IMG/VR virus record: IMGVR_UViG_3300035698_035310
Coordinates: 124,001 to 188,000 of that record
Strand: one strand, 5' to 3'
Length of the DNA stretch: 64,000 nucleotides
Made by a program: the position numbers and the translations under genes. The first letter of the stretch is position 1. Every line of letters starts with the position of its first letter. The notes under the pieces were generated by a model. That model saw nothing but the letters and a program-made list of their open reading frames with translations, did not search any database and was not told where the DNA came from. Below, in pieces: positions 22,141 through 62,364 of the stretch.

Positions 22141-22326
22141 ATGACAGAAGTATTAAAATCATTATATATACAAAGTGAAATATCGCGCATAACTAAACGC
22201 ATTAAACAATATAATCAAATTTACCATTCGTTAGAAATAAAAGATTTGAATTTAAAACGATTGATAACTAATAAACAACGAGAAATAGATATCTTAGATA
22301 TGATATCAAGAGGAAACAATCAATGA
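22141..22326 (+). CDS. hypothetical protein
   Basis: 61-aa ORF, ATGA overlap downstream. Confidence 0.55.
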   Translation: MTEVLKSLYIQSEISRITKRIKQYNQIYHSLEIKDLNLKRLITNKQREIDILDMISRGNNQ

Positions 22327-22646
22327 CTGAAATAGAAACAAGAGCTACATTATTCGCCGTAAAATCTATGTTCCCAGCAGAACACATTGAAACAGCCAAT
22401 CGATTAGAATGGTGTCAAGAAAACAACATGGAATTTTTTAATGTTAGCATTCGTGGCACCAAAGTGGGTGATGTATTTTATGACGAACAAGAAATGCAAG
22501 AAATTGGCGTTCTTGAATTGCTTGATGCAGATGGTGTCAAAAAAGGCGAGATAAACCTTGAAACATTACCACCAATCAACATCGGTATGGGATTTGTGTT
22601 TCATGATGAAACAGATGCCGCAGCATTTAAGCTGCAATGGAACTAA
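22323..22646 (+). CDS. FKLRW-family small protein
   Basis: LEWCQEN...DETDAAAFKLQWN. Confidence 0.75.
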   Translation: MTEIETRATLFAVKSMFPAEHIETANRLEWCQENNMEFFNVSIRGTKVGDVFYDEQEMQEIGVLELLDADGVKKGEINLETLPPINIGMGFVFHDETDAAAFKLQWN

Positions 22647-22840
22647 TAAAAGTATCAGTTGGCAGTGATACAAATTTAGTTGATAATTCTATAATATGGT
22701 GCAAAGAAAATAATATAAACTTTGAAAAATATGAACCAATTCATAAATCTAATAAATTTGATCGTGATATAATCGTTGGTTTTATTTTTTATTTTTTAGC
22801 AGAAGAGGACGCGTTTGCATTTAAACTGCGATGGGTTTAA
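22637..22840 (+). CDS. FKLRW-family small protein
   Basis: IIWCKEN...EEDAFAFKLRWV. Confidence 0.75.
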   Translation: MELIKVSVGSDTNLVDNSIIWCKENNINFEKYEPIHKSNKFDRDIIVGFIFYFLAEEDAFAFKLRWV

Positions 22841-22906
22841 GTGTTGACATTACCATATTATTAATATATTATATAGTATAGTGAAAATAGAGAAGGATTA
22901 TAAAAT

Positions 22907-23686
22907 ATGAAATTTACATTTCTAGGTGCAGGTAGCGCATTTACGATGGAAAACTATCAATCTAATATGATAGTGACATCAGATTCTGGAAAAAATTTAT
23001 TAATTGATTGCGGTGGCGATGTGCGCCATAGTATGAAAGCGGCAGGATTTGGCGTAGCCGATATTGATGCGATATATGTCAGTCATCTACATTCAGATCA
23101 CACTTCTGGAATCGAATGGTTGGCGTTTAATACATATTTTAATGATGCCTTAAAACAACCAAAAATGTTTATCAATGAAAAACTTTCACGTGAACTTTGG
23201 GAAAATACACTACAAGGTGGACTTGGAAGCATACAAGGAAAAATAACCACCCTTGATTCATATTTTGAAGTTACTCGTGTTATAAAAAACAAATGTTTCA
23301 TTTGGGAGGATATTGAATTTAGACTCGTTCAAGTGATTCATTATATGGATGGATTTGACATTGTTCCATCATATGGTTTGTTGTTTACAGTGAATGGATT
23401 GAGATATTTCTTAACTACTGATGCTCAACATGCTCCTTCGCAAATTCAAGATTTTTACAACATGAGTGATGTTATCTTTCAAGATTGTGAAACTACCCCG
23501 TTTGCATCCGGTGTTCATGCGCACTATGAAGAACTTATAACACTTAATGAAGAAACAAAAGCCAAAATGATACTATATCATTATTCAGATGGCGACAAGA
23601 AAGATTGCACCAACGATGGATTTAGATGTTGGGCAACAAATCAAATGGAAATTGATTTAAATACAGGAACGGTAATTAACGCATGA
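22907..23686 (+). CDS. metallo-beta-lactamase-fold hydrolase (RNase Z / phosphodiesterase-like)
   Basis: FLGAGSAF, LLIDCG, SHLHSDH, TTD, MILYHY. Confidence 0.85.
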   Translation: MKFTFLGAGSAFTMENYQSNMIVTSDSGKNLLIDCGGDVRHSMKAAGFGVADIDAIYVSHLHSDHTSGIEWLAFNTYFNDALKQPKMFINEKLSRELWENTLQGGLGSIQGKITTLDSYFEVTRVIKNKCFIWEDIEFRLVQVIHYMDGFDIVPSYGLLFTVNGLRYFLTTDAQHAPSQIQDFYNMSDVIFQDCETTPFASGVHAHYEELITLNEETKAKMILYHYSDGDKKDCTNDGFRCWATNQMEIDLNTGTVINA

Positions 23687-23886
23687 CAAAAACGTGGTGG
23701 TTTTGGATAATGTTAGCATTGGGTATTATAATACAATATCCATTTGAATTATTCACTTATGGAATGTTGCTAGAGTCAGGCGTGGCTGCATTTTTAGGAC
23801 TCACATCTGGACTAAATATTTTAGAATATTATATGTGGGTTTTGGTGCTATATGCATATCATATGGACAAATTATATATTAAATAA
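23683..23886 (+). CDS. small membrane protein
   Basis: hydrophobic 67-aa ORF, ATGA overlap. Confidence 0.55.
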   Translation: MTKTWWFWIMLALGIIIQYPFELFTYGMLLESGVAAFLGLTSGLNILEYYMWVLVLYAYHMDKLYIK

Positions 23887-23918
23887 TATAGACAATCTAA
23901 CACAAAAATGGTATTATA

Positions 23919-24227
23919 ATGGCAGAACTAAGTGAAGATGAAGAATTAAAACAACTATTAGACGACGATGATTTAAGAGATTATTTCAACGGACGCGACC
24001 CTAATAGAAAAAAATCAGACCCTTTTATATCTGAAGAGACCGCGAACCGTCATAGAGGAAAATCCACTGTTTTAACGACAAAGGATGTTCCAGAAGAAAA
24101 ACAAGAAACACACGGAATATCTTTTACACAACACGTTAAAAGCATTAAAGAAACAGCTAGGCAATACATGTGGATAGGCATATCTGTTGGATTATTCTTA
24201 GCAATTATCATAACCTTAATATTATAG
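23919..24227 (+). CDS. tail-anchored membrane protein
   Basis: C-terminal hydrophobic helix. Confidence 0.6.
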   Translation: MAELSEDEELKQLLDDDDLRDYFNGRDPNRKKSDPFISEETANRHRGKSTVLTTKDVPEEKQETHGISFTQHVKSIKETARQYMWIGISVGLFLAIIITLIL

Positions 24228-24236
24228 AGGAAAAAT

Positions 24237-24608: not shown

Positions 24609-24628
24609 GATTCCGAACGTATGTTAAC

Positions 24629-25084: not shown

Positions 25085-25138
25085 ATAATGACTATTTACT
25101 AAATTTATGCTACAATAATAAAAAATAAGGAAGCATTA

Positions 25139-25927: not shown

Positions 25928-25929
25928 AT

Positions 25930-26154
25930 TTAGCCCCAGCGTAGCTTAAAAGCCATCGCTGATTCAAGATTAAAAAATAAAACACCAGTGGAACACATGC
26001 ATGCACCACTGGTGTATCCATCTAAAATAAAATCTTCTTTTACTTTTAGATTTTCAAATAACCAATTATCTATAAATTTTTCAGATATCACTGTATCATA
26101 TTCAAAATATAAATCACTTGTTCTTCTTATTTTATAAAATTCTTCTACAGCCAT
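25930..26154 (-). CDS. FKLRW-family small protein
   Basis: IDNWLFEN...ESAMAFKLRWG. Confidence 0.75.
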   Translation of the reverse strand: MAVEEFYKIRRTSDLYFEYDTVISEKFIDNWLFENLKVKEDFILDGYTSGACMCSTGVLFFNLESAMAFKLRWG

Positions 26155-26351
26155 CTCATTTTGAATCCCATTGAATCTTCTTCATCTAACAACCAGACCA
26201 CCGATGATGGTGGTTTTCGGACATCGGCAGAATCACATATGGCATAACTGTCTTCATCGATATTGTCGATCAGCCATAGTTTAACTTCATCCATTTCGTT
26301 GTTGGAAATATAGAATTTTGTGTTGTTTATTTGACGTATTTTCATATCCAT
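26145..26351 (-). CDS. FKLRW-family small protein
   Basis: KLWLIDN...[12 protein letters not shown]. Confidence 0.75.
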
Positions 26352-26710
26352 CGTAATTTAAATGCAACCACGTCGCTTTCATTATTGAATACAAATTTAT
26401 ACGTTAAATTATTTCGTTTGTCTTCAGTATAAGACCGGACGTAATATTCTTCAACGTTTTCTTTGAGCCACTCATTCATGTTATTTACCGTGACTTCATC
26501 ATAGTTTTGCAACAACGCATAATATGATTGCTGTTCAACAATTTCAAATGATGGCTCCAATGATTTAGACTGAACTGTGTGTATCGTTTCACTGCATATA
26601 TCAACGCATTCATTGCAAATATATACATCTACACTAGCAATTAAATGTTTTACTTGCGATTGATCTTTTTTACAAAATGAACATGTAGGTACTTTATTTT
26701 TTATAGCCAT
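26342..26710 (-). CDS. ClpX C4 zinc-binding domain fused to an FKLRW-family domain
   Basis: [30 protein letters not shown] followed by NEWLKEN...[12 protein letters not shown]. Confidence 0.85.
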
Positions 26711-27051
26711 TTTAATTTAAACGCTGTAACGTCTTCCTTGCATGTAAAGGTGAATTCAACGGTATTAGTGCCGTTGATCGAATAATTGGTTTTGTTTTCA
26801 AATATGTATACTATATCATTATCCACGCACCAATCATCTATTAAATCAACGCCGTCTGCAATCATGGCTGAATATACGTCATACGTTACAATAAATTTAT
26901 ACTTAAAAAATTTTTCTACTTGAGAATGAAAGCCAACTATATCATTTAATAACGTAATATTTGTTGGATTGTTTATTTTTTTAGTATCGACATCAAAATC
27001 TTGTAATATTTCAAATAATACTGCTTTGCGTAATGTATCTATATCATTCAT
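26701..27051 (-). CDS. FKLRW-family small protein
   Basis: IDDWCVDN...[12 protein letters not shown]. Confidence 0.75.
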
Positions 27052-27070: not shown

Positions 27071-27418
27071 TTATATCCATCTTAATTTAAACGCCATCGC
27101 AGATTCTTTGTCATCATAAAACAACACTTCTATTTCTACCATTCCATTATCATCTTCGTCCCAACCAGACCAATCCCAACGCCAATCACTAGTGCAATTT
27201 TCAAGCAACCAATCATGTTCTTCGTGATTGTTAAAATCCCATTCTTCACTAACTTTCGTTCCGTTTTTTTCACGACGTGGTGGATTTATTTTTGTCCCTG
27301 ATATTTTAATATTAACTGTATTTTCGGATATGATCGATTTGTTATATGATGGCGTCGGTATAGACGCTGTCGATACTTCTAATGTATATTTTCTACCACA
27401 ATGAATATCGCCTTCCAT
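27071..27418 (-). CDS. FKLRW-family protein
   Basis: likely start MEGDIH at 27418; DWLLEN...KESAMAFKLRWI. Confidence 0.7.
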   Translation of the reverse strand: MEGDIHCGRKYTLEVSTASIPTPSYNKSIISENTVNIKISGTKINPPRREKNGTKVSEEWDFNNHEEHDWLLENCTSDWRWDWSGWDEDDNGMVEIEVLFYDDKESAMAFKLRWI

Positions 27419-27550
27419 GATTAATCTCTTTTTAATTGTTAATACTTTTTCAGTATAATACCAAATATATACTGATAATGTCAATATCTCTTGACATACA
27501 TTAATGATGTGATATAGTGTTCTTATAACTGATCTTGAAAGGATTTTATA

Positions 27551-28294
27551 ATGGCTTATGTTCGCGCAGTTCAAAACATTTTAGATATGGAAATTGAAGA
27601 TTTATATTTTGAAAGTGATGGAAAATATCACAAAAAAGGCGAGTTGAGGCGATTGGGTGCACGCACAAAATACGTCAAATTAAAGATTTTATTTTATAGT
27701 GCACAAGACAACATGGATGACGAATTGGCATCACAAGCAGAAAAAGCAGCAGATGAAATTAAAAATCCTTGTTACGTCGGCGATGAACGTCGCGAGGAAA
27801 TTTTAGCAAAAATATCACACATCACAGAAGAAGAACGTGCTCAAGGTAAAACGAAACATGCCACATTTTCAGTGGAGGATCGCAACTGGCGCACAAAAGG
27901 TGTTCATGGTATATTTCATAATGAATCTAATTCTATTGTTATTTTCAAAGAGAAACATGGTGATTCATTGTATGATATGAGTTCTGCATTTAATGCTGCT
28001 AGCGCGTTTCTTACTGTGCTACGCGAACGATTGAATGATGGTTGGTATAACGATCAACTCGAGGATGAAGATCATGAATCCAACCAATTGGATTTATTGA
28101 AATCCAATGAAATTATATTAACCGAAGAACAGGAAGCTAGAAAAATTGTCGACATGGCTACCAACCGTAAAATAACAGGAGATTTTATTCGTGCTGGAAA
28201 AGATGCGTATGAATTCTTGCAAGATCGTAGCGAATATGAATATGGTTGTTTTTCTATTGAGACGCCATCGGTTGCTGATTTTACATTGACATAA
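27551..28294 (+). CDS. hypothetical protein
   Basis: 247-aa ORF with AAGGA SD. Confidence 0.7.
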   Translation: MAYVRAVQNILDMEIEDLYFESDGKYHKKGELRRLGARTKYVKLKILFYSAQDNMDDELASQAEKAADEIKNPCYVGDERREEILAKISHITEEERAQGKTKHATFSVEDRNWRTKGVHGIFHNESNSIVIFKEKHGDSLYDMSSAFNAASAFLTVLRERLNDGWYNDQLEDEDHESNQLDLLKSNEIILTEEQEARKIVDMATNRKITGDFIRAGKDAYEFLQDRSEYEYGCFSIETPSVADFTLT

Positions 28295-29234: not shown

Positions 29235-30536
29235 ATGACACATATATCGTTATATAATAGCATGTCGAGAGAAAAAGAAAAATTCAAACCAATAGACGAT
29301 TCTCGCGTAACTATGTATTATTGCGGTATCACCCCTTATGATAAACCACATCTTGGTAACGTAAGAGCGAGTATCACTGGTGATATGATATATAGACTGT
29401 TGCGGGTTTTTTATAAATCAGAAAATGTCATATATGCTAGAAATATTACTGACATAGATGATAAAATCGAAGCAAAAAGCCAAGAAACAGGAAGGTCTGC
29501 GATTGATATAACGAATGAAACTATTCAATGGTTTCATGAAACTATGAAAGTATTACATGTATTGCCACCGGATTTGGAGCCAAGGGTTTCTGATAATGAA
29601 GAATCTATGATGGATATGATTAACATATTACTTGATAAAAATATCGCATATAAATCAAATAATGGTGACATTTATTTTGAATTAGATAAATTTCCAGAAC
29701 ACGGAAAATTATGCCGCCACAGTCGCGAAGATTTAAATATAAATGAAGAACATTCTTCAGAAAAAAAACATCCACAAGATTTTGTTTTATGGAAAGAAAA
29801 TCATCAACGATTTGGTTGGCATATTGAATGTTCCGCGATGATTAAAAAGCATTTGGGTGACACTATCGATATTCATGGTGGTGGTGGTGATTTACGTTTC
29901 CCACATCATGAGAATGAAATAGCTCAAAGTGAAACTGCTAATGGTGTCCCATTGGCTAATTACTGGATGCATAACGGTATGATTACAGTGAACGGAAAGA
30001 AAATGGCTAAATCTACTGGAAGCTTTATTACAGTCGATGAAGCACTAGATCGTGTTCCCGGCGAAGCGATACGATTTTACATGCTTAAGACGCATTACCG
30101 TAAACCGTTTGATTGGTCGTGGGATGGTTTGATGGAAGCCAAGTCTGAACTTGATGGGTTATATAGAAAGATGCAGAAACGCACTTATGTTAAAATGGGT
30201 GGCGTGTCAGTACAAGTATTATATGCGTTGGCTGATGATTTGAATACACCATTGGTGATATCAGAATTATACAAAGAAGCGGATAAGGAAATATCTTCTT
30301 TATTGGATTCGGCGCAGCTATTGGGTATACTGAATCATACACCAGAAGAATGGTTTCATGGCACAACGAAAGATTCATTACTTGATGCATCGTCAATCGA
30401 GGCACTTATTGAAGTACGGAAACTATTGAAAGAAAATGGCGACTATGAATCTGCGGATATAACAAGAGATATATTATTAGGACAAGGCATTATACTTGAA
30501 GATAAACCAGATGGGACAACTTGGCGAAAAATATGA
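29235..30536 (+). CDS. cysS: cysteine--tRNA ligase
   Basis: YYCGITPYDKPHLGNVR, RNITDIDDKI, GWHIECSAM, DIHGGGGDLRFPHHENE, KMAKS. Confidence 0.95.
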   Translation: MTHISLYNSMSREKEKFKPIDDSRVTMYYCGITPYDKPHLGNVRASITGDMIYRLLRVFYKSENVIYARNITDIDDKIEAKSQETGRSAIDITNETIQWFHETMKVLHVLPPDLEPRVSDNEESMMDMINILLDKNIAYKSNNGDIYFELDKFPEHGKLCRHSREDLNINEEHSSEKKHPQDFVLWKENHQRFGWHIECSAMIKKHLGDTIDIHGGGGDLRFPHHENEIAQSETANGVPLANYWMHNGMITVNGKKMAKSTGSFITVDEALDRVPGEAIRFYMLKTHYRKPFDWSWDGLMEAKSELDGLYRKMQKRTYVKMGGVSVQVLYALADDLNTPLVISELYKEADKEISSLLDSAQLLGILNHTPEEWFHGTTKDSLLDASSIEALIEVRKLLKENGDYESADITRDILLGQGIILEDKPDGTTWRKI

Positions 30537-30784
30537 TTATAACACAACAAACTAATAGTCTAGATGAGTGTAGATATGTATGTTTGGACGACAATCAAAA
30601 TCTTACAGAATTAATGGATTTACTATATTGGCTGTCTGAAAATTGTTATAGAGTGCCAGGATTGGAATGGGTGTTTAGACGATTGGATCGATATAATCAA
30701 ATAATTATCACATTTGGTTTTAATTCATTAAGTGATTGTTATAATGATGAATATCATATGGCATTCAAGTTAAAATGGTTGTAG
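30521..30784 (+). CDS. FKLRW-family small protein
   Basis: LYWLSEN...YHMAFKLKWL. Confidence 0.7.
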   Translation: MAKNMIITQQTNSLDECRYVCLDDNQNLTELMDLLYWLSENCYRVPGLEWVFRRLDRYNQIIITFGFNSLSDCYNDEYHMAFKLKWL

Positions 30785-31943: not shown

Positions 31944-32192
31944 ATGTGTAATCCATATATAAAAATATTTGAATATATCATGGATACACAATATTCAGAG
32001 ATATATAAATGGTTGCGCAATCACGGCGAAGATGGTATAGATTGGTGCATAGAAGACTACAATCAACAATATGTAATCAATGGTATGGATAATAACGTGA
32101 GTGTGGAATGTGATATGGTTGTAAAAATATATAATATTGATGTAGCGGCAGTTTTTGAAATGGAGCAAGTTGGTGGGCATAATGGAAAATAA
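31944..32192 (+). CDS. degenerate FKLRW-family small protein
   Basis: IYKWLRNH...DVAAVFEM. Confidence 0.55.
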   Translation: MCNPYIKIFEYIMDTQYSEIYKWLRNHGEDGIDWCIEDYNQQYVINGMDNNVSVECDMVVKIYNIDVAAVFEMEQVGGHNGK

Positions 32193-32403
32193 AAATAGAC
32201 ATATATCAGAAACAGGGCGTCATATTCTTGAAACACATCCATATGTAGTTGAGAATATTGATGACAGCGATTGTTTTGTTGATATCATATATTGGACACG
32301 GGCGGTGTTTGGTGGTAAGGAAGAACGGGTAATAACATGTTGGAATAATTATTATTTTAGACATGAAGTCGATTGTTTTAATTTTAAAATGAGGTGGTTG
32401 TAA
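32182..32403 (+). CDS. FKLRW-family small protein
   Basis: IIYWTRAV...HEVDCFNFKMRWL. Confidence 0.7.
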   Translation: MENKNRHISETGRHILETHPYVVENIDDSDCFVDIIYWTRAVFGGKEERVITCWNNYYFRHEVDCFNFKMRWL

Positions 32404-33196: not shown

Positions 33197-33799
33197 ATGC
33201 AGTTTCCATTCATCAAATCAAATGTAACATTGGGGCTATTCATGAAAAATGAATATGTCAAAGTGAAATCACGATATACCAAATTATATGAACTTGCGAG
33301 ACATTATTGGTTTGAATTGGTTTGTTTATCTATTTTAATGATGGTTATTATATCAAGTATGGATAAAACATATACGCCAGTGGTTATAACACCAGTAGGT
33401 GTGGAAACAACATCAAACACTATCGCCGTTCAACCATCAAATACATACATTGATTTAAATTCAATTGTGCGATATAAATCGACGATGATGGACAATGAAA
33501 CTGTTGGTGATATAGAACGGCACGATCTTATTAATGCGCATGAAAACAAGTTTGTTGGTCAACGTATAATTCACACTGGCAAACTTGATATAATAGATAC
33601 AAAATATGATCATTATGCATTATATATATCAACCGCCAGTATATATGATGACGCGAAGTGTAAAATTGATATAGATGATAAAAAAATAATATATACACTA
33701 CGCGAGGACGCAATTGTAACTATAAAAGGGTCAATTGAAGAAATCACGTTCAATTATAATATTGCAGATTGCGTTGTTGTGATGCCTGATGAAAAATAA
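33197..33799 (+). CDS. membrane-anchored hypothetical protein, possible OB fold
   Basis: one TM segment followed by a beta-rich domain; start uncertain. Confidence 0.55.
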   Translation: MQFPFIKSNVTLGLFMKNEYVKVKSRYTKLYELARHYWFELVCLSILMMVIISSMDKTYTPVVITPVGVETTSNTIAVQPSNTYIDLNSIVRYKSTMMDNETVGDIERHDLINAHENKFVGQRIIHTGKLDIIDTKYDHYALYISTASIYDDAKCKIDIDDKKIIYTLREDAIVTIKGSIEEITFNYNIADCVVVMPDEK

Positions 33800-34053
33800 T
33801 GAGTGATGAAAAATCTATATTTCATGACGTTGAAGAATCCAACACCGACGTGGGAATTGAGTATACACTTTGGGGAAGTTATGATATAATCATCGAAGTT
33901 ATGAATTGGCTACATGAACATTATCCATCGACGTGGGGAATTGAATGGACTGTCGATCATCATAATAGACACGACGCGATAAACGTTGTATTCAATTTAA
34001 AAGAATGCAATACTGATGCAGCACTTATGGGGTTTAAATTGAGATGGTTGTAA
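33799..34053 (+). CDS. FKLRW-family small protein
   Basis: VMNWLHEH...DAALMGFKLRWL. Confidence 0.75.
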   Translation: MSDEKSIFHDVEESNTDVGIEYTLWGSYDIIIEVMNWLHEHYPSTWGIEWTVDHHNRHDAINVVFNLKECNTDAALMGFKLRWL

Positions 34054-34433
34054 AAAATTTTATAGCATTGCCACACGATCCGTATTTTTCTAATGTAGTA
34101 ATAACTAATAGAGAGCCGGATAAAATGAGAGTGTATATACAACATAAAGGAGCAACGCCGTATAATAATCAATCACATACAACATTATCTATATTGGCTA
34201 CATCTGTTTATGTAATAGAATTAAACACCATGCCAATAGCAAAATATGTTTTTATAATGTTGTATCATTCAGATGTCATATTGATAAAAAATTTTGTTAA
34301 ACAAAACAACCTTGCTTGTTCGTTTTCAACGGGAAAAATTATAAAGGATCGAAATAATAATAAAAAGACTGGTTATCTATGTTCTACTAATGATGAAACC
34401 GCCGCAATGGCTATTAAAATGATGTGGAGTTGA
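34044..34433 (+). CDS. FKLRW-family protein
   Basis: ends DETAAMAIKMMWS. Confidence 0.65.
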   Translation: MVVKNFIALPHDPYFSNVVITNREPDKMRVYIQHKGATPYNNQSHTTLSILATSVYVIELNTMPIAKYVFIMLYHSDVILIKNFVKQNNLACSFSTGKIIKDRNNNKKTGYLCSTNDETAAMAIKMMWS

Positions 34434-34436: not shown

Positions 34437-34712
34437 ATGAAAATTAACTGCGTGGAAAAAATGGATCATAAACCGGCATATGAAACTGTTGATGTTTGTA
34501 ATGACGGAATACAGGTACATATAATAAAACAGTGCCCGGCAAAATATACATGTTTGTTTCCTACTAGAAATGAGGCAATTATTTTTATTCGTGAATTGAA
34601 AAAAATACCAAGTATTGATTATCAACAGTATCATTTGGGTGATAGAAATCTATTGGAAGTTAATATTCATTCGAAAGACGCATTATTTTTGTTTTCATTG
34701 AGATGGTTATAA
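34437..34712 (+). CDS. FKLRW-family protein, tandem paralog 1
   Basis: ends SKDALFLFSLRWL. Confidence 0.7.
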   Translation: MKINCVEKMDHKPAYETVDVCNDGIQVHIIKQCPAKYTCLFPTRNEAIIFIRELKKIPSIDYQQYHLGDRNLLEVNIHSKDALFLFSLRWL

Positions 34713-34713
34713 T

Positions 34714-34992
34714 ATGTCAATACATATAGAATGCGTAAATCGAATGATTGAACGACCTGTATTCGTAGACATCGAAACTGTTGGTGGTAGAGGTGTTATA
34801 ATACAAGACCAGCATGATTCGATACCAGCAGAATTTAATATATTTTCAGATACGAATAAAGAGTTGCATAAAATAATGAATGAAATATCACGTATGCATG
34901 GTGTAACAATTACAGATACTCGTGATCTCTGGGCAACTATTAATGTTAATACAAAAGAATCATTGCTTTTGTTTTCATTGAGGTGGCGGTAA
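34714..34992 (+). CDS. FKLRW-family protein, tandem paralog 2
   Basis: ends TKESLLLFSLRWR. Confidence 0.7.
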   Translation: MSIHIECVNRMIERPVFVDIETVGGRGVIIQDQHDSIPAEFNIFSDTNKELHKIMNEISRMHGVTITDTRDLWATINVNTKESLLLFSLRWR

Positions 34993-34993: not shown

Positions 34994-35275
34994 ATGACGG
35001 AATTGTATATACATCAAACTGTGCGGATGCACCATAAGCCATCATTTGAACAATACAACACCTTGGGTGGTGGTGGTTACATCAATTATACGAATGAGTT
35101 TGTACCAGCAGAATTTATTTGCAACGCAGATGATTCTGCAACATTACTTGCGTTTATAGACGAGTTGAGAATATTACCCGGTCTTCAAGTTGACAGAGAG
35201 CATCATCAATCTGAGATTACCGTTAAAATTCATTCAAAAGAAACATTATTAATATTTTGGTTGAGGTGGATGTGA
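34994..35275 (+). CDS. FKLRW-family protein, tandem paralog 3
   Basis: ends SKETLLIFWLRWM. Confidence 0.7.
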   Translation: MTELYIHQTVRMHHKPSFEQYNTLGGGGYINYTNEFVPAEFICNADDSATLLAFIDELRILPGLQVDREHHQSEITVKIHSKETLLIFWLRWM

Positions 35276-35433
35276 TGTTATATAGATTTAAAGATATGGA
35301 CGTTAAGCCGGATGAAAACATAAAAGAATGGTGCAATGAAAATTTAACAGACGGTGAAGTAGAATTTGGTGCTACTACCATTTACATACAATCGGAGATA
35401 GATGCAATGGCGTTTGAATTAAGATGGATTTAA
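35275..35433 (+). CDS. minimal 52-aa FKLRW-family protein (not in ORF track)
   Basis: MLYRFKD...IKEWCNEN...SEIDAMAFELRWI; TGATG overlap. Confidence 0.75.
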   Translation: MLYRFKDMDVKPDENIKEWCNENLTDGEVEFGATTIYIQSEIDAMAFELRWI

Positions 35434-36165: not shown

Positions 36166-36272
36166 TTCCTTGGCTTTTATGATAGTATAAATAATAAAGT
36201 AGTGGGACAGCCCAACTTCCTTGGCGGGTTTTAGTTGTTGAAACCAACTAATTACCACTATATCTATTTATT
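36166..36272. promoter_or_regulatory. convergent TATAAATA-type boxes flanking a structured element; SD-complementary repeat
   Basis: TATAAATA (+) 36186-36193; AATAAATA (-) 36272-36265; TTCCTTGGC at 36166-36174 (SD of GIY-YIG gene on -) repeated at 36217-36225; stem TAGTGG/CCACTA. Confidence 0.6.
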
Positions 36273-36288
36273 TTTTGGAGTTAAAATC

Positions 36289-37506
36289 ATGAATGACCAT
36301 CGCGAGATTGCTACAGCTTTAGACTTATTTCATTTTGAGGAGCATTCACCAGGAATGGTATATTGGCATCCTGAAGGGTTTAAATTATATCGAACCATAG
36401 AAGAATATATGCGAAGCATGCATGAAAAATATGGATATAAAGAAATTAGAACACCAATAATGGTCAATAAATCTTTATGGAAATTGTCTGGTCATTGGGA
36501 TAAATTTCAAGACAATATTTTTATTGCTGGTGAAATAGGTGAAGTAATAAGCGATGAGTTAATTTATACTGACGGGCAATATGTAATGTCTCCGATGAAT
36601 TGTCCAAATCATATACAAGTGTACCAAAAGGGAACAAAGTCTTACAAGATGCTACCTGATCGTTTATTTGAATTTGGTGTGGTGCATCGCAATGAACCAT
36701 CTGGATCATTGGCTGGCATTATGAGATTGCGAAGTTTTACACAAGATGACTCGCATATACACTGTACTGAAGATCAAATTTTGAGTGAAACAACCAATTT
36801 TATCAATATGCTTCAAGAAGTTTATTCTAAGTTTGGGTTCAATGACGTCGCTGTAAAACTTGCCACTCGATGTGAAGAACGCATTGGCGACGATGCCAGT
36901 TGGGATAAAGCCGAGAAAGCATTAGAAGATGCTTGTATACATCTTGGATTGGAATACACAATTAATCCCGGTGAATCAGCATTCTATGGCCCAAAACTTG
37001 AGTTCACGCTACAAGATAGCCTTGGTCGTGATTGGCAATGTGGAACCATCCAGATTGATTTTAACATGTGCGAACGATTGGGTGCTACATACATTGACGA
37101 AAATGGTGATAAGAAACATCCGGTATTGATTCACCATGCTGTATTGGGAAGTTTGGAACGCTGGGTTGGTGTATTGCTTGAGAACAGCAATGGTGAACTA
37201 CCGTTGTGGCTTGCCCCTACACAAGTGGTTGTTGCCAGTATTACCAGTGATGTTAATGACTATGCTGAAGAGAAAATGGTTACACTTAGTGGTATCGGAT
37301 ATCGAGTTGAGTTGGATGACCGAAATGAAAAAATCGGTAAGAAAATCAAAGACGCACAGAAACGACGTATTCCATATATGCTTATTGTGGGTAAAAAGGA
37401 AAAAGAGAATCAAATGGTCAACGTTCGCAAATTGAACGGCGACCAAGATGATATGGAGTTGATAGATTTTATAGGATCATTCGTCAAATCTACAAATGAA
37501 AGGTGA
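36289..37506 (+). CDS. thrS: threonine--tRNA ligase lacking the N-terminal TGS/editing domains
   Basis: starts at DHREI...DLFHF...PGMVYWHPEG; MNCPNH, HRNEPSG, FTQDDSH, AFYGPKL, WQCGTIQ; GGAG SD before ATG 36289. Confidence 0.93.
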   Translation: MNDHREIATALDLFHFEEHSPGMVYWHPEGFKLYRTIEEYMRSMHEKYGYKEIRTPIMVNKSLWKLSGHWDKFQDNIFIAGEIGEVISDELIYTDGQYVMSPMNCPNHIQVYQKGTKSYKMLPDRLFEFGVVHRNEPSGSLAGIMRLRSFTQDDSHIHCTEDQILSETTNFINMLQEVYSKFGFNDVAVKLATRCEERIGDDASWDKAEKALEDACIHLGLEYTINPGESAFYGPKLEFTLQDSLGRDWQCGTIQIDFNMCERLGATYIDENGDKKHPVLIHHAVLGSLERWVGVLLENSNGELPLWLAPTQVVVASITSDVNDYAEEKMVTLSGIGYRVELDDRNEKIGKKIKDAQKRRIPYMLIVGKKEKENQMVNVRKLNGDQDDMELIDFIGSFVKSTNER

Positions 37507-37699
37507 ACGTGTTTTTGATAAAATGAAACTCCCATATCCATGTTACGTTAATTATGGCGTTGACCCAGATATGGTAATCGAATGGTGTGATGAGAATATC
37601 GAGTGTAAATGGGGGTATTTTCATCAAAATAACGGAACTCTTTATATATACATTACAGATGATGTATATGGAATTGCATATAAGTTAAAATGGTCTTGA
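37496..37699 (+). CDS. FKLRW-family small protein
   Basis: VIEWCDEN...DDVYGIAYKLKWS. Confidence 0.75.
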   Translation: MKGERVFDKMKLPYPCYVNYGVDPDMVIEWCDENIECKWGYFHQNNGTLYIYITDDVYGIAYKLKWS

Positions 37700-39616: not shown

Positions 39617-40036
39617 ATGAGCGACACAGATGAAATAAGAACACCAGTAGAAAATATTGATGCAATTCTTGATGTCGACAATTATTTTAATTTGCAAGAA
39701 AAAATTCACAATTATTTTGGATATGTTGAAGATTGGAAAGTGATGGCATTGGTCGATCATCGATCTGATTATTGGATATTACACGAAATTAAAAATGATG
39801 ACGGTGAAACATATGGCGGCGAAGTTTTTTATCACGATGATCCATTTATAGATGGATATAAAACCGAAGGAAATTACTACAGCGCAGTTCTTTATATGCA
39901 ACGATTTCTTCCACAGTGGATATATCGTACAAAAGATTTTACCATGATTTGTATGGACACGCAATGCGACGATAACAAATATATTGGTATATTTTCTAAT
40001 ATGAATGAACAACCAAATATAGTTCCATACGTATGA
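39617..40036 (+). CDS. hypothetical protein
   Basis: GGAG SD before ATG 39617, in frame with track ORF 39413. Confidence 0.65.
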   Translation: MSDTDEIRTPVENIDAILDVDNYFNLQEKIHNYFGYVEDWKVMALVDHRSDYWILHEIKNDDGETYGGEVFYHDDPFIDGYKTEGNYYSAVLYMQRFLPQWIYRTKDFTMICMDTQCDDNKYIGIFSNMNEQPNIVPYV

Positions 40037-40308
40037 TAATACGTTATTCAGACTCTTCAAAATTTTGGAGATATTTAACATTATTTATATTGCCAAAACA
40101 TAAAGCACGTGTATATAATGCAACAGATGAGGAAATAAACGAGTTAAAAAAATGGCTGAGTGATCAAAAAATATGGTTTTTTAGTAATAAAATAGATTAC
40201 TACTCTGCTAAAAATGCGGATCATGCAAAATCATCCAAACCATTGATAACAATACATATTAGAGATGAAGAAGTATTGATGGGTATGAAATTGGCATGGG
40301 AAAATTAA
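40033..40308 (+). CDS. FKLRW-family small protein
   Basis: LKKWLSDQ...DEEVLMGMKLAWEN. Confidence 0.65.
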   Translation: MIIRYSDSSKFWRYLTLFILPKHKARVYNATDEEINELKKWLSDQKIWFFSNKIDYYSAKNADHAKSSKPLITIHIRDEEVLMGMKLAWEN

Positions 40309-40331: not shown

Positions 40332-40625
40332 ATGAGTAATATGTATACCATACAGTGGATGGGGTTTAACGAACAACCCAATTACAATCGCGTCTGGGGT
40401 CATATAAAAATGAAAGACGGCAGAGATTATGTTTTTTGGGGAGTCAAAGATAAAAAAATAGAATTCAAACTTCATGATCACGATAATAAAATATCTTATA
40501 TTATTAACCAAAATGAAAAAAAAGGTTATAAAAAAATACATCCCGCACACTATGAAATAATATGTCCAGATTTTATTGAGAATATGGAAATATGGTTTAC
40601 CACACACGTGTTAATGGGAGATTAA
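40332..40625 (+). CDS. WGR-like domain protein, tandem paralog 1
   Basis: NRVWG...YVFWGVKDKKIEFK. Confidence 0.55.
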   Translation: MSNMYTIQWMGFNEQPNYNRVWGHIKMKDGRDYVFWGVKDKKIEFKLHDHDNKISYIINQNEKKGYKKIHPAHYEIICPDFIENMEIWFTTHVLMGD

Positions 40626-45630: not shown

Positions 45631-45822
45631 ATGCAATCAAAGCAATATACGTTTTCTATACTTAAAAATGAATCACGTGTAAATTCATCCGAACTATTAA
45701 AATGGATCAATGTGGTGGTTAAAGATAACTGGACTAAAAAAGATTACAAAACCAAAACTGTGTATACATTTAATGATCCGAATGATGCACTTAAATTCAA
45801 GATGCGCTGGACGTTTGCATAA
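45631..45822 (+). CDS. FKLRW-family small protein
   Basis: GGGAG SD; LLKWINVV...DPNDALKFKMRWTFA. Confidence 0.7.
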   Translation: MQSKQYTFSILKNESRVNSSELLKWINVVVKDNWTKKDYKTKTVYTFNDPNDALKFKMRWTFA

Positions 45823-56172: not shown

Positions 56173-57036
56173 ATGTCTAAAGATATTTATAACACTAAAT
56201 TTATATTCGGTCAAGATTATCATGGATTTATTTATGAATGGGTTGATAATTCTAATGGTAAAAAATATATAGGATCGCATAAAGGGTCGATTGATGATGG
56301 ATATATAGGTTCAGGAACATATTTTATTTCTGCTTATAAAAAAAGAACCCATTGTTTTAGTCGAATAATATTAGAATATATATCAAAAAATATAGATGAT
56401 ATATATACCATTGAACAAAAATGGTTAAATATGGTAAATAATATATCATCAAATGAATCATATTATAATCTATCAAATAACGCAACAGGGGGAAATTCTG
56501 AAAAAAACTACGCACGAAAAAGAAATGGTGAATTTACTGAAAAAGAAATGATTGCACATGAGCGAAAAGCCAATGGTATATTTACACCAAAAGAACTAGA
56601 GTTTCATAAACGTCGAAAAAATAGATTTTTAAATGGTGATTATACAAAAGCAGAAAAACAGTCTTATATACGATCTAAAGAGCGAAAATCAGCAGGGAAT
56701 TTTACAGATGCAGAAATTAAATATTTTAGTGAACAAAAAAAGAGAAAATCAAATGGTATATTTACACCAAAAGAAATAGAGTTTCATAATAATCAAAGTA
56801 ATCGGAAGTCGGCAGGAAATTTTACAGATGCCGAGTTAAAATGTTTAAATCTCGATAAAATAAGAAAATCAAAAGGCTTATTTACCGATGCGGAATTAAA
56901 AAATTTTAAGAACATGAAGGGAAAACGATGGCTTACCAAAGATTTTATCAATAAATTAATATCAAAAAATTTAATACAACAATATATTGATGCCGGTTGG
57001 ATATTTGGAAAATATAAAAAAATCAATCCCAACTAA
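56173..57036 (+). CDS. GIY-YIG homing endonuclease (Seg-like) with C-terminal repeats
   Basis: GFIYEW...KKYIGSH...DGYIGSG, FSRIILE, EQKWL, YYNL; seven G-x-(F/Y)-T-x-x-E repeats. Confidence 0.88.
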   Translation: MSKDIYNTKFIFGQDYHGFIYEWVDNSNGKKYIGSHKGSIDDGYIGSGTYFISAYKKRTHCFSRIILEYISKNIDDIYTIEQKWLNMVNNISSNESYYNLSNNATGGNSEKNYARKRNGEFTEKEMIAHERKANGIFTPKELEFHKRRKNRFLNGDYTKAEKQSYIRSKERKSAGNFTDAEIKYFSEQKKRKSNGIFTPKEIEFHNNQSNRKSAGNFTDAELKCLNLDKIRKSKGLFTDAELKNFKNMKGKRWLTKDFINKLISKNLIQQYIDAGWIFGKYKKINPN

Positions 57037-61015: not shown

Positions 61016-61102
61016 GATACATCCCCTATATTAATATTATGTGCATGATATCAATATTTAAGAAATATGTCAATGAATATCAATGATTTGGTTCAGTCAA
61101 GA

Positions 61103-61342
61103 TTAATCCAATGACCTTATTATAACATCACCGCCAGAAAATTGAACCAGTTCTTCCATTGTTTCTGGCCCGATTATTGCGTCAGGCATCGTATTTTTTA
61201 TATACTGTAACACTGCTTCGGTTTCTGTCGAACTCAATAAATCAAATGTCAATTCAACCATATCGTCATATTTTTTCACGTTGACCGGGAGACCCATGAG
61301 ATGTATAAGTTCTGTTGATATAGGACCAATCATTTTGTTCAT
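61103..61342 (-). CDS. hypothetical protein
   Basis: 79-aa ORF, ATGA overlap. Confidence 0.6.
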   Translation of the reverse strand: MNKMIGPISTELIHLMGLPVNVKKYDDMVELTFDLLSSTETEAVLQYIKNTMPDAIIGPETMEELVQFSGGDVIIRSLD

Positions 61343-61575
61343 TGTTGTTCCTGATTTATAAAAACGCTGCGATGATAATTAGGATATAAACTATGCAAAT
61401 TTTCTTGTGTTAATGGAAAATTTTTACACGTTTTTTTTATAACAGTTAATAATTCTTTTCGATTAATAGACACTCTTACATCGGGTAATTTTTGTCCATG
61501 CCAACTTTTTCGATATATAAACACGATATCGCTATTGGTGCCGATTAAAACTATTTCTTTAATTTCTTCATTCAT
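61339..61575 (-). CDS. hypothetical protein
   Basis: 78-aa ORF. Confidence 0.55.
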   Translation of the reverse strand: MNEEIKEIVLIGTNSDIVFIYRKSWHGQKLPDVRVSINRKELLTVIKKTCKNFPLTQENLHSLYPNYHRSVFINQEQQ

Positions 61576-61611
61576 TATATACTCACTTACATTTATGTCA
61601 ACTATAAATAT

Positions 61612-61863
61612 TTATACCACCGTAATCCATACGTCATTAATATAATCAGCATAACATTCTATGATTTCAGCTTGTGTTGCAGTTGCAGTGTCGATATCAA
61701 GTTTTATTTGTATTTTTCCGTTTGATAATATATATATTAATTCATTCATTTCTTTAAGTGTAAGACCAAGCATACCATCACTCATGATAGATTTCACGAT
61801 ACTTGATGTTCCATCCACATATTGATCTAGTTCATCGATATAAATTTCTATCATTATAACCAC
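61612..61863 (-). CDS. hypothetical protein
   Basis: 83-aa ORF; start could be ATG 61854. Confidence 0.55.
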   Translation of the reverse strand: MVIMIEIYIDELDQYVDGTSSIVKSIMSDGMLGLTLKEMNELIYILSNGKIQIKLDIDTATATQAEIIECYADYINDVWITVV

Positions 61864-62126
61864 CTTAACTTGAATGCCATCGCATATATATCATCTTCAA
61901 GAGCAAACAAAACTTTAGATCGTTTTACACCTTCTCCGTGAAAAAATAGCCAATGTTCTAATTCGATGCTATTTTCATCAGCCCATTCATAATATTCAGA
62001 TAAATTCAACTCCCATCCATACGATGATTCTTTTGCCCACAATCTCATCACCACGCTATAACAATTGGATATCTTTCTATCATCCGGCATGATTTGGTCT
62101 GGAATGGTGTCAGTTATCTTCATCAT
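61854..62126 (-). CDS. FKLRW-family small protein
   Basis: YYEWADEN...DDIYAMAFKLRWL. Confidence 0.75.
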   Translation of the reverse strand: MMKITDTIPDQIMPDDRKISNCYSVVMRLWAKESSYGWELNLSEYYEWADENSIELEHWLFFHGEGVKRSKVLFALEDDIYAMAFKLRWL

Positions 62127-62364
62127 CCACCACGCCGTGCCATCTTAATTTATAACCCATTGAATCTATTTCATCATTAATTTGTATATCTACTGTATTA
62201 CTTGTTCTGTTAATGGTATGTGAAAAATCTATTTTATTATCAAATAACCAAAACAGTCTTTCGCGCTCACCTTCTGTTAATACTGCGCCCGTTCTTTCAT
62301 GTAGCGTCGATTCTATTATATCTATATTATCACAAGATGATAGTTTTTTGCCCATATGAAACAT
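62110..62364 (-). CDS. FKLRW-family small protein
   Basis: LFWLFDN...DEIDSMGYKLRWH. Confidence 0.7.
   Translation of the reverse strand: MFHMGKKLSSCDNIDIIESTLHERTGAVLTEGERERLFWLFDNKIDFSHTINRTSNTVDIQINDEIDSMGYKLRWHGVVDDEDN

What the first reader, a model, noticed from the sequence alone, without database searches (positions are those of the whole stretch)
22323..62364. About 20 dispersed paralogous small proteins with a W-x-x-E-N core and terminal (D/E)xxAxxFKLRW motif
Seen: ORFs at 22323, 22637, 25930, 26145, 26342, 26701, 27071, 30521, 32182, 33799, 34044, 34437, 34714, 34994, 35275, 37496, 40033, 45631, 61854 and 62110 (plus degenerate 31944) end in F/Y-K-L/M-R/K-W or close variants. Most also contain an internal W(C/L)xEN-like helix. 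They occur on both strands, in clusters, with very divergent N-terminal and central parts. Inference: an expanded small alpha/beta scaffold used as a diversified arsenal, such as anti-defence factors, host-protein binders or adaptors. Its function is unknown to me.
Basis: partly seen in the sequence, partly recalled or inferred. Interest (0 to 1): 0.62.

Follow-up and report, generated by a model that had tools for sequence, protein, structure and literature searches.

The report
Expanded small-protein family in jumbo phage
A 359-kb salt-lake phage carries about 38 very divergent copies (20 in this window) of an uncatalogued, phage-only ~60-residue domain with a conserved core and variable surface, probably a set of binders for host or phage proteins, though its function is untested.

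Summary
Twenty of the 21 listed ORFs belong to one homologous family; 31944 is not significant. Eighteen ORFs carry the C-terminal motif, against 0.03 expected by chance.

The window lies in a 359-kb jumbo-phage record from salt-lake metagenomes. That genome holds about 38 copies, with a median pairwise identity of 22%.

AlphaFold2 gives a confident (pLDDT 92) beta-alpha-beta-beta-alpha fold, a ferredoxin-like fold without its last strand. Only generic structural matches (ACT, RRM) turn up.

No Pfam or PHROG model matches, and no paper holds the motif. An exhaustive profile search nevertheless finds 2,113 protein clusters, nearly all small proteins that end one residue after the conserved Trp. 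Members sit in tandem arrays in viral contigs of 26-61% GC. Counts in cultured phages:
- Sinorhizobium phage Phosso: 41 profile matches
- Pseudomonas phage PA5oct: 3
- Agrobacterium phage Atu_ph07: 4, weak
- Eight other large phages: none
- Cellular genomes: essentially absent

The function is untested. The most likely reading is a conserved scaffold with a hypervariable surface, used as an arsenal of host or phage protein binders. A link to the Clp proteases encoded by these phages is a live alternative; it rests on one ClpX zinc-finger fusion and on family genes lying next to Clp genes in three phages.

The parts
22323..22646 (+). Family member, 107 aa, with a long insertion between helix 1 and the hairpin; ends AFKLQWN
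   Evidence: Profile E 2.9e-12; lies 200 bases downstream of the ClpA-like gene
22637..22840 (+). Family member, 67 aa, close to the bare domain; first row of alignment A2 and so the sequence AlphaFold2 folded
   Evidence: Profile E 1.7e-17; AlphaFold2 pLDDT 91.6, beta-alpha-beta-beta-alpha
25930..26154 (-). Family member, 74 aa; last gene of a five-gene minus-strand array
   Evidence: Profile E 9.4e-16
26145..26351 (-). Family member, 68 aa; its start overlaps the stop of the previous gene
   Evidence: Profile E 4.6e-17
26342..26710 (-). Family member, 122 aa, with an N-terminal ClpX C4 zinc finger (residues 9-44) fused to the family domain (residues 65-122)
   Evidence: PF06689 E 1.9e-15, 56.9 bits, cut-off 27; profile E 1e-17; P0057, from another sample, has the same architecture
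26701..27051 (-). Family member, 116 aa, with the domain in the C-terminal half
   Evidence: Profile E 2.9e-12
27071..27574 (-). Family member and first gene of the minus-strand array; the open frame is 167 aa from a TTG, but the true start is probably further downstream
   Evidence: Profile E 7e-16; a sigma-70-like site (11 of 12) on the minus strand at 27484-27455 lies inside the long frame
27455..27518 (.). Pair of divergent sigma-70-like promoter matches (11 of 12 each) between the minus-strand array and the plus-strand gene at 27551
   Evidence: Consensus matches only: the count over the whole region is not above shuffles (119 against 110 +/- 11)
30521..30784 (+). Family member, 87 aa; its start overlaps the end of the cysteinyl-tRNA synthetase gene
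   Evidence: Profile E 8.9e-16; neighbour identified
31944..32192 (+). Doubtful degenerate copy: has a W-C-I-E-D helix but no terminal motif
   Evidence: Profile E 0.1-0.4, not significant
32155..32403 (+). Family member, 82 aa or less; helix 1 reads Y-V-V-E-N; its stop overlaps the start of the dephospho-CoA kinase gene
   Evidence: Profile E 1e-12; neighbour identified
33799..34053 (+). Family member, 84 aa
   Evidence: Profile E 3.7e-16; P0007, 73% identical, comes from an independent 817-bp ENA contig
34044..34433 (+). Weak family member, 129 aa; ends AIKMMWS
   Evidence: Profile E 1.1e-5
34437..34712 (+). Divergent trio member, 91 aa; no W-x-x-E-N; ends LFSLRWL
   Evidence: Own-genome profile E 8.3e-10, independent profile E 1.5
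34714..34992 (+). Divergent trio member, 92 aa
   Evidence: Own-genome profile E 5.8e-9; no relative outside this genome in the word search
34994..35275 (+). Divergent trio member, 93 aa
   Evidence: BLASTP E 1e-12 to 34714; AlphaFold2 pLDDT 82: three extra N-terminal strands, then beta-alpha-beta-beta-alpha
35257..35433 (+). Minimal family member: 58 aa from TTG 35257, or 52 aa from ATG 35275
   Evidence: Profile E 5.9e-15
37496..37699 (+). Family member, 67 aa; its start overlaps the end of the threonyl-tRNA-synthetase-like gene
   Evidence: Profile E 5.9e-17; neighbour identified
40033..40308 (+). Family member, 91 aa; ends GMKLAWEN
   Evidence: Profile E 1.2e-13
45631..45822 (+). Family member (an alternative ATG lies at 45550); ends KFKMRWTFA
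   Evidence: Profile E 2e-12
61854..62126 (-). Family member, 90 aa
   Evidence: Profile E 2.1e-14
62110..62364 (-). Family member, 84 aa, with a 9-residue acidic tail after the Trp
   Evidence: Profile E 5e-11
19868..22126 (+). Context: phage ClpA/ClpC-like double AAA+ unfoldase, 752 aa, directly upstream of the first two family genes
   Evidence: Clp_N, AAA, AAA_2 (E 9.5e-57) and ClpB_D2-small; 42-48% identical to the ClpA of Phosso, Atu_ph07 and PA5oct

Best explanation
The ORFs encode a real, phage-restricted and so far uncatalogued domain family of about 60 residues.

Shown: the domain folds as beta1, helix 1 (ending W-[CL]-x-E-N), a beta2-beta3 hairpin of variable length, and helix 2 (E-E-D-A-M-A-F-K-L-R-W). 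The protein nearly always stops one residue after the Trp. This is a ferredoxin-like fold lacking its fourth strand.

Inferred from sequence periodicity: the conserved residues are the hydrophobic core and helix caps, so they hold the scaffold together. The exposed sheet face, the hairpin and the N-terminal extensions vary almost without limit.

The genes are small, mostly acidic, and packed head-to-tail with overlapping stops and starts between auxiliary genes (tRNA synthetases, DNA methylases, an Apyc1-like nuclease). They have multiplied to about 38 copies in this genome and to similar numbers in other phages.

Most likely (inferred, not shown): each paralogue is a soluble, non-virion binder whose variable surface recognises a different host or phage protein. 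Together they would form an arsenal for host takeover or counter-defence that grows by duplication and divergence.
For: Family and fold:
- Profile E-values down to 1e-17 among 4,402 ORFs; 18 motif-bearing ORFs against 0.03 expected.
- AlphaFold2 pLDDT 91.6; the divergent trio shows the same order of elements.

Conserved scaffold, variable rest:
- Information content is high only at Y (beta1), W/E/N (helix 1), W (beta2), F-x-F (beta3) and the terminal helix.
- Median identity between genome copies is 22%, maximum 40%.
- The distance from W-x-x-E-N to the C-terminus ranges from 29 to 73 residues.

Phage-only and multi-copy:
- 2,113 clusters at E <= 1e-3. ESM Atlas neighbours are 88-100% viral.
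- 41 profile matches in Sinorhizobium phage Phosso, about 30 in 20 kb of an ENA contig, and 7-10 per 6 kb in IMG/VR contigs of 26-61% GC.
- Only 3 pattern hits in 596 Gb of prokaryote genomes, about what I estimate chance would give.

Protein properties:
- Median pI 5.1.
- The three PA5oct members carry no ESI-MS/MS note, unlike several neighbouring genes.

Neighbours include an Apyc1-like protein (PF23023, 93 bits) and two DNA methylases.
Against: - No binding partner, phenotype or expression data exist. No RNA run holds the sequence.
- No member matches any known anti-defence or takeover family.
- In PA5oct the three members lie among nucleotide-metabolism and replication genes, outside the block defined as early (gp34-gp105; PMC7318152). 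This does not fit an immediate-early takeover role.
- The near-invariant Lys and Arg of helix 2, and the fixed stop one residue after Trp (138 of 158 proteins), hint at a shared functional site. A pure 'scaffold plus variable surface' picture does not explain that.
Confidence: 0.45

Rival explanations
1. Clp-linked family. The conserved C-terminal helix and tail would dock onto the phage's own ClpX, ClpA or ClpP machinery, either as adaptors that deliver proteins bound by the variable surface or as modulators or decoys. That would make the family a set of substrate selectors for targeted proteolysis.
For: - One member (26342-26710) is a fusion of a ClpX zinc-binding domain with the family domain, and the same fusion occurs in another sample (P0057).
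- The genome encodes a ClpA-like protein, a full-length ClpX and two ClpP.
- Family genes lie next to Clp genes in three phages: directly after ClpA here; 0.5 kb after ClpP in PA5oct, which has only three copies; around the second ClpP of Phosso.
- Every larger family-bearing record tested has ClpP: this genome (G000), Phosso, Atu_ph07, PA5oct and the IMG/VR contigs G003 and G004.
- The protein ends at a fixed point after a basic-hydrophobic stretch. From my own recollection, this loosely recalls the C-terminal ClpX-binding tail of SspB (L-R-V-V-K).
Against: - The co-occurrence may only reflect shared ancestry of Atu_ph07-like (group 2.2) jumbo phages, which are known to carry ClpA, ClpX and ClpP (PMC7824862).
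- Salicola phage SCTP-2 has ClpA/ClpX-like genes but no family member.
- The half-genome IMG/VR record G001 has nine copies and no ClpP or ClpA.
- Most copies are not near Clp genes.
- The zinc-finger fusion is a single evolutionary event.
- In the model the motif is a packed helix, not a free tail, and the last residue is variable.
Confidence: 0.2
2. Nucleic-acid-binding regulators. The RRM/ACT-like fold with a conserved Lys and Arg would bind RNA or DNA, and the paralogues would act as gene-specific translational or transcriptional regulators.
For: Structural matches to RRM domains, to the papillomavirus E2 DNA-binding domain and to the N-terminal domain of B-family polymerases, at Z 5.5-6.9. 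Lys and Arg are conserved in helix 2.
Against: - Those matches are at the level expected for any small ferredoxin-like fold; the tool notes that a best Z of 7-8 is typical for unrelated models.
- There are no RNP1/RNP2-type aromatic residues on the sheet and no Pfam RRM hit.
- The proteins are acidic, with median pI 5.1 and net charge about -4 per 100 residues.
- The conserved residues sit in the helices, not on the sheet face that RRMs use.
Confidence: 0.1
3. Duplicative filler. A gene that multiplies by tandem duplication and drifts, enlarging the genome without each copy having its own function, as proposed for tandem arrays in phage G and phage 121Q.
For: Tandem arrays of more than 30 genes have been read this way in jumbo phages (PMC5646251). 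Copy number differs widely between phages: 41, about 38, 4 and 3.
Against: - Copies are only 22% identical yet all keep open frames, the core residues and the exact C-terminal end. That means long-lasting purifying selection on each copy.
- For 26 of 37 genome copies the nearest relative is in another phage rather than a neighbour, so many paralogues are old and retained.
- Only one doubtful decayed copy (31944) is seen.
Confidence: 0.1
4. Virion-internal or assembly proteins, with the conserved C-terminus as a packaging or assembly signal.
For: The fixed C-terminal end could in principle be a targeting signal.
Against: - The three PA5oct members carry no mass-spectrometry note in a record where virion-associated proteins are marked (PMC7318152).
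- The genes lie among metabolic and auxiliary genes, not structural modules.
- The motif is part of the folded core.
Confidence: 0.05

Closest known systems
Tandem or lineage-specific gene expansions in jumbo phages (arrays of more than 30 genes in phage G and 121Q, PMC5646251; about 35 zinc-ribbon copies in phage G, PMC7824862)
   Same: Tens of copies of one small domain in a single jumbo-phage genome, of unknown function, seen as one route to genome enlargement or conflict adaptation.
   Different: - It is a different domain: the profile finds nothing in phage G or in GAP32.
- Copies here are very divergent (median 22% identity), not 'very similar'.
- They are spread over many clusters on both strands.
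- The family is shared by many unrelated-looking phage contigs of 26-61% GC.
ACT domain (for example the TyrA regulatory domain, PDB 5v0s) and other ferredoxin-like small domains (RRM, MzrA)
   Same: Best structural match: Z 8.5, rmsd 2.2 A over 60 residues. Same beta-alpha-beta-beta-alpha order, with two helices on one face of the sheet.
   Different: - The fourth strand is missing.
- No Pfam ACT or RRM match in 110 members.
- 13% identity.
- No sign of the ligand-binding loop.
- The Foldseek E-value is only 0.05.
Uncharacterised small proteins of uncultured Caudovirales in BFVD (A0A6J5L5R8 and others) and unnamed viral clusters in the ESM Atlas
   Same: Same fold (TM 0.65-0.79) with 23-25% identity, and the same size. 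These are probably members of the same superfamily.
   Different: I could not fetch their sequences to test membership with the profile.
SspB-type ClpX adaptors
   Same: A small protein with a basic-hydrophobic extreme C-terminus. Here one member is fused to the ClpX zinc-binding domain that such tails bind, and the phage has its own ClpX and ClpP.
   Different: - No sequence or fold similarity to SspB was found.
- The motif is helical and packed in the model, not a flexible tail.
- The resemblance is recalled from memory and was not tested.
NDUFS4 (complex I 18-kDa subunit)
   Same: Marginal profile hit (E 0.09) over a strand followed by an E-D-A-x-x-F stretch.
   Different: It is not among the structural matches, and helix 1 of the family aligns to a non-equivalent segment. 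I treat it as chance.

Membership tests
Any Pfam-A or PHROG family | Significant match of the domain to a curated profile | tested here: not met
   No consistent hit for 10 window members or for 100 homologues even at E <= 10 (Pfam) and E <= 0.1 (PHROGs). Only the N-terminal ClpX zinc finger of one member matches.
ACT domain | Four-stranded beta-alpha-beta-beta-alpha-beta fold | tested here: not met
   The model has three strands and two helices and ends with helix 2. Structural overlap with the TyrA ACT domain gives Z 8.5.
ACT domain | Sequence profile match (PF01842 and relatives) | tested here: not met
   No hit.
RRM | RNP1/RNP2 motifs on the central strands, and a profile match | tested here: not met
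   No PF00076 hit. Strand positions are variable apart from F-x-F. Structural Z is only 5.3-6.9.
ClpX adaptor with a zinc-binding-domain-binding tail (SspB-like) | The C-terminal peptide binds the ClpX zinc-binding domain | not tested
Only context points this way.
ClpX adaptor with a zinc-binding-domain-binding tail (SspB-like) | The motif lies on a flexible, exposed tail | tested here: inconclusive
   In the model the motif is a helix with pLDDT about 90. Only the last residue or two could be free.
Jumbo-phage tandem arrays of near-identical genes (phage G / 121Q type) | More than 30 copies in one genome | tested here: met
   37 profile hits plus 34994 in this genome; 41 matches in Phosso.
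Jumbo-phage tandem arrays of near-identical genes (phage G / 121Q type) | Copies very similar and in one contiguous array | tested here: not met
   Median identity 22%, maximum 40%. Copies are spread from 30 kb to 331 kb of the genome, on both strands.
NDUFS4 | Significant sequence or structure match | tested here: not met
   E 0.09 only; absent from the fold-search lists.

The most novel reading that the evidence does not exclude
The family is a bacteriophage counterpart of the expanded substrate-adaptor gene families of large eukaryotic viruses. The invariant C-terminal helix and tail would plug each paralogue into the phage-encoded ClpXP/ClpAP protease, and the hypervariable surface would capture a different host protein (for example defence proteins). 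The phage would then carry a programmable set of about 40 degradation adaptors.
Probability: 0.12. Interest if true: 0.85.

Novelty: new variant of a known kind. Interest (0 to 1): 0.6.

Why it matters
- **An unnamed family accounts for many 'unique' ORFs.** It has more than 2,000 sequence clusters and reaches 30-40 copies per genome in some of the largest known phages. It has no Pfam or PHROG model and no mention in the papers searched. Naming it would annotate roughly 5-8% of the genes of phages such as Phosso, by my own estimate of gene numbers. The paper on phage AP-J-162, of almost the same size and host genus, counts 304 'unique' ORFs (PMC11242549).
- **The pattern resembles conflict-driven gene families.** A strictly conserved scaffold, a free surface, old paralogues kept under selection and a phage-only range are what one sees in conflict-driven multigene families of large eukaryotic viruses. 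Few comparable cases are described in phages.
- **It can be tested now.** Members occur in cultured phages of laboratory hosts (Sinorhizobium meliloti, Pseudomonas aeruginosa PAO1, Agrobacterium).
- **The Clp link, if it holds, would be new.** It would reveal a way for phages to redirect proteolysis.

Tried and rejected
- **Word-based protein search with the family alignment.** It returned only the genome's own proteins plus one 78-aa ENA protein, which first suggested a nearly unique family. The exhaustive profile search overturned this with 2,113 clusters.
- **tblastn of consensus-like members against 50,697 phage records.** Nothing at E <= 0.01. At E <= 10 there was one weak Phosso hit, and a profile search of that genome then found 41 matches. 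BLAST is too insensitive for this family.
- **Megablast of window DNA against phages.** No match.
- **IMG/VR scan for the exact D-A-M-A-F-K-L-R-W pattern.** Only 2 loci.
- **The search for related loci.** It failed on alignment A2 and on A3 for genome contigs; a DNA pattern was used instead.
- **NDUFS4 lead (E 0.09).** Rejected after the fold searches.
- **Homodimer prediction.** 'No answer', score 0.00, controls not run. This is no evidence either way.
- **Pfam scan of the longer members and N-terminal extensions.** Nothing apart from the ClpX zinc finger.
- **Promoter and terminator scan.** Counts do not exceed shuffles. Only the divergent pair at 27455-27518 is worth noting.
- **Sequencing runs.** Only salt-lake DNA runs hold the stretch and none is RNA. 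Laying four runs showed identical low-depth pieces of the same phage, with no variants and no information on gene gain or loss.
- **PA5oct omics paper.** It has no per-gene text for gp247, gp274 or gp275, and no supplements are held.
- **Literature searches.** Searches for the motif, for 'Phosso' and for expanded families in jumbo phages found no description of this family.
- **The genome search 'relatives'.** Not available for a virus record.

Full report
**1. What the window is**

The window is bases 124,001-188,000 of a 359,044-bp IMG/VR virus record. IMG/VR classes the record as 'provirus' and CheckV estimates it 94% complete. Its proteins are also on record on a contig of 570,750 bp. G+C is 36%.

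The sequence is held by salt-lake metagenome runs. Other salt-lake samples hold identical low-depth pieces, and no RNA run holds it.

The gene content is that of a jumbo tailed phage:
- a ClpA/ClpC-like unfoldase, an Apyc1-like metallo-beta-lactamase-fold protein, two N6/N4 DNA methylases, cysteinyl-tRNA synthetase, a threonyl-tRNA-synthetase core, dephospho-CoA kinase and GIY-YIG/NUMOD3 endonucleases;
- two tRNAs;
- elsewhere in the genome, a full-length ClpX and two ClpP genes.

The ClpA-like protein is 42-48% identical to those of Sinorhizobium phage Phosso, Agrobacterium phage Atu_ph07 and Pseudomonas phage PA5oct. Atu_ph07 proteins serve as the ClpA and ClpX examples for group 2.2 jumbo phages in PMC7824862, and that paper names ClpP as the most prominent host-directed peptidase of some group 1 and 2.2 phages.

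**2. Check of the observation**

All the ORFs exist as described. Eighteen ORFs of at least 40 aa end in the relaxed motif, against a mean of 0.03 in 200 shuffles. Of 13 occurrences of [FY]K[LM][RK]W in the six-frame translation, 12 lie within three residues of a stop.

An iterated profile over all 4,402 ORFs of the genome converges on 35 ORFs, with E-values down to 1e-17. A second profile, built only from homologues in other samples, finds 32. The union is 37. With 34994 added, 20 of 38 copies lie in the window.

Three points need correction:
- The trio 34437/34714/34994 is a divergent subgroup without the W-x-x-E-N helix. Only the genome's own profile scores it well.
- 34994 is tied to the trio by BLASTP (E 1e-12) and by structure.
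- 31944 is not significant.

**3. Anatomy**

Alignments A1-A3 and the per-column information content show a core of about 60 residues:
- a strand with a conserved Tyr;
- a helix ending W-[CL]-x-[ED]-N;
- a strand starting with Trp, Tyr or Phe;
- a strand with F-x-F;
- the helix [ED]-E-D-A-M-A-F-K-L-R-W.

In 138 of 158 fetched family proteins the Trp is the penultimate residue.

AlphaFold2 on 30 aligned domains gives mean pLDDT 91.6 and pTM 0.74, with elements E3-7, H11-23, E28-37, E43-52 and H55-65. The trio model (pLDDT 82) has three extra N-terminal strands followed by the same five elements.

From helical periodicity, the conserved residues are those expected in the core and at helix caps. 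The conserved Lys and Arg would be exposed.

The remainder is free to vary. Median identity between genome copies is 22%. The segment from W-x-x-E-N to the end spans 29-73 residues, and N-terminal extensions differ from copy to copy.

Some homologues carry two domains in tandem (P0009, P0011, P0033, P0091). One window member, and P0057 from another sample, carry an N-terminal ClpX C4 zinc finger.

The proteins are mostly acidic, with a median pI of 5.1.

**4. Is the fold known?**

Only in a generic sense.
- Foldseek against the PDB has no hit below E 0.05.
- The exhaustive aligner's best match is the ACT domain of TyrA (Z 8.5), followed by RRMs, MzrA and the N-terminal domain of B-family polymerases at Z 5.5-6.9. 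The tool itself says this level is common for unrelated small folds.
- The domain is a ferredoxin-like fold without its last strand.
- Among viral predicted structures, the best matches are uncharacterised small proteins of uncultured tailed phages (TM up to 0.79, 23-25% identity).
- ESM Atlas neighbours are unnamed, 88-100% viral clusters.
- A marginal NDUFS4 sequence hit (E 0.09) is not backed by structure.

**5. Is the family known?**

No Pfam or PHROG model matches 110 members. No paper in the library holds the motif. Papers on jumbo phages, including two reviews and the paper on a 471.5-kb Sinorhizobium jumbo phage (AP-J-162), do not describe it.

The family is nevertheless large and widespread.
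- The exhaustive profile search of 1.84 billion representatives returns 2,113 clusters at E <= 1e-3. Nearly all are 55-110 aa, with the domain at the C-terminus.
- The genes come in dense tandem arrays: about 30 in 20 kb of a 110-kb ENA contig, and 7-10 per 6 kb in IMG/VR contigs whose G+C ranges from 26% to 61%.
- Among cultured phages the profile finds 41 places in Phosso (469 kb), of which the two I inspected are annotated 'hypothetical protein'. It finds 4 weak ones in Atu_ph07 and 3 in PA5oct (EST35_0247, _0274, _0275).
- It finds none in T4, RB43, CcrBL9, BcepSauron, SCTP-2, XacN1, GAP32 or phage G.
- A DNA pattern for D-A-x-A-F-K-L-R-W-x-stop hits only three times in 596 Gb of prokaryote genomes. 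That is about what I estimate chance would give, and one hit is a 434-bp, low-coverage contig.

The family is therefore essentially phage-restricted.

For 26 of 37 copies in this genome, the nearest relative is in another phage contig rather than a neighbour. Many paralogues are therefore old and retained, not recent duplicates.

**6. How it most likely works**

Shown:
- one homologous domain with a confident common fold;
- a conserved core and a variable remainder;
- restriction to phages and high copy number;
- long-term retention of each copy;
- dense co-oriented packing with overlapping stop and start codons among auxiliary genes.

Inferred: each copy is a soluble binder whose variable sheet and hairpin surface recognises a different target, most plausibly host proteins during takeover or counter-defence.

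Supporting hints:
- the proteins are acidic;
- an Apyc1-like gene and DNA methylases lie beside the arrays;
- the PA5oct members carry no virion mass-spectrometry note;
- a sigma-70-like promoter pair sits in front of the five-gene minus-strand array (consensus matches only).

Against an immediate-early role: the PA5oct copies lie outside the block defined as early.

I put the family and fold statement at about 0.95 and the binder-arsenal function at about 0.4-0.45.

**7. The main rival: a link to Clp proteolysis**

Evidence for:
- the fusion of a ClpX zinc-binding domain to the family domain;
- a full phage Clp set in this genome;
- family genes right after ClpA here, 0.5 kb after ClpP in PA5oct (which has only three copies), and around the second ClpP of Phosso;
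- ClpP in every larger family-bearing record tested;
- the fixed basic-hydrophobic C-terminal end.

Evidence against:
- the co-occurrence may be shared ancestry;
- SCTP-2 has Clp unfoldases without the family;
- a half-genome with nine copies shows no ClpP or ClpA;
- most copies are not near Clp genes;
- the motif is a packed helix in the model.

I give this reading about 0.2. My one complex-prediction job went to the homodimer question and returned no verdict, so binding to Clp remains untested.

Other rivals are weaker, for the reasons given in their entries: nucleic-acid binding, duplicative filler, and virion or assembly proteins.

**8. Novelty and verdict**

Large same-domain expansions in jumbo phages are known:
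- about 35 zinc-ribbon copies in phage G, called unprecedented in PMC7824862.

This case is a different, unnamed domain. It has far more divergent copies and a much wider spread across phage contigs. I rate it a new variant of a known kind, with interest 0.6. The family is real, large and testable in cultured phages, but its function is still an inference.

Noticed in passing
window 19868-22126; genome G000:C1 about 6006-6113, 297085-297597 and 324879-325427: The phage encodes a full Clp set: a ClpA/ClpC-like unfoldase in the window, a ClpX with its zinc finger inside a 423-residue open frame, and two ClpP paralogues (E 3e-81 and 4e-33).
   Followed up: partly
window 22907-23686 (+): A metallo-beta-lactamase-fold protein matches the anti-Pycsar family Apyc1 (PF23023, 93 bits against a cut-off of 50). 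It lies directly after two family genes and is a candidate cyclic-nucleotide-degrading counter-defence enzyme.
   Followed up: no
window 29235-30536 and 36235-37506 (+): The phage encodes a cysteinyl-tRNA synthetase (433 aa) and a short threonyl-tRNA-synthetase-like protein (423 aa) that has only the class II core and the anticodon-binding domain. A family gene overlaps the 3' end of each.
   Followed up: no
window 30869-31672 and 31669-31923 (+): An N6/N4 DNA methylase appears split into two overlapping ORFs. The first matches only profile positions 1-111 of 221; the second begins like the C-terminal part. This could be a frameshift, a programmed shift or a broken gene.
   Followed up: no
window 35436-36158 (-) and 56173-57036 (+): Two GIY-YIG/NUMOD3-type homing-endonuclease-like genes. 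One is inserted on the opposite strand between a family gene and the threonyl-tRNA-synthetase-like gene. The second was identified by eye from repeated NUMOD3-like motifs and was not scanned.
   Followed up: partly
window 57023-61015 (-): A 1,330-aa Thr/Glu/Asp-rich protein with about ten repeats containing T-I-T-Y-S-D-G-T-V-E, a Gly/Glu-rich spacer and a C-terminal region with Asp-rich calcium-binding-like motifs. It may be a surface or fibre protein.
   Followed up: no
window 48746-49951 and 49996-50814 (+): Two adjacent ORFs together look like an NAD-dependent DNA ligase split in two: a K-M-D-G adenylation motif in the first, and helix-hairpin-helix and BRCT-like sequence in the second. This was read by eye and not scanned.
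   Followed up: no
window 40332-40625 and 40627-40926 (+): A tandem pair of 97- and 99-aa paralogues shares the pattern W-G-x-(I/F)-x-M-K-(D/N)-G ... F-W-G ... K-K-(I/L)-(E/K)-F-K-(L/I)-H. There is no Pfam hit at E <= 0.001.
   Followed up: no
window 62786-63578 (-): Another small paralogous group. The ORFs at 63145-63360 and 63321-63578 both end Y-I-S-V-A-Q-L. The ORFs at 62786-63211 and 63145-63360 share an L-Y-K-C-G-T-V-M-T stretch, and the frames overlap, which is unexplained.
   Followed up: no
window 13542-14819 (+): A strong DUF6638 match (E 6e-100) that has no tblastn hit in 50,697 phage records.
   Followed up: partly
whole record (G000): IMG/VR labels the 359-kb record 'provirus', and its proteins are also on record on a 570,750-bp contig. 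The true genome may therefore be larger than the record, or a host boundary may have been called inside a very large phage genome.
   Followed up: no
G000:C1:199832-200236 (-), outside the window: By eye, one family member has an N-terminal stretch resembling a MORN-type repeat (G-x-L-H-R-x-N-G-P-A) in front of the domain. Pfam gave no hit.
   Followed up: partly
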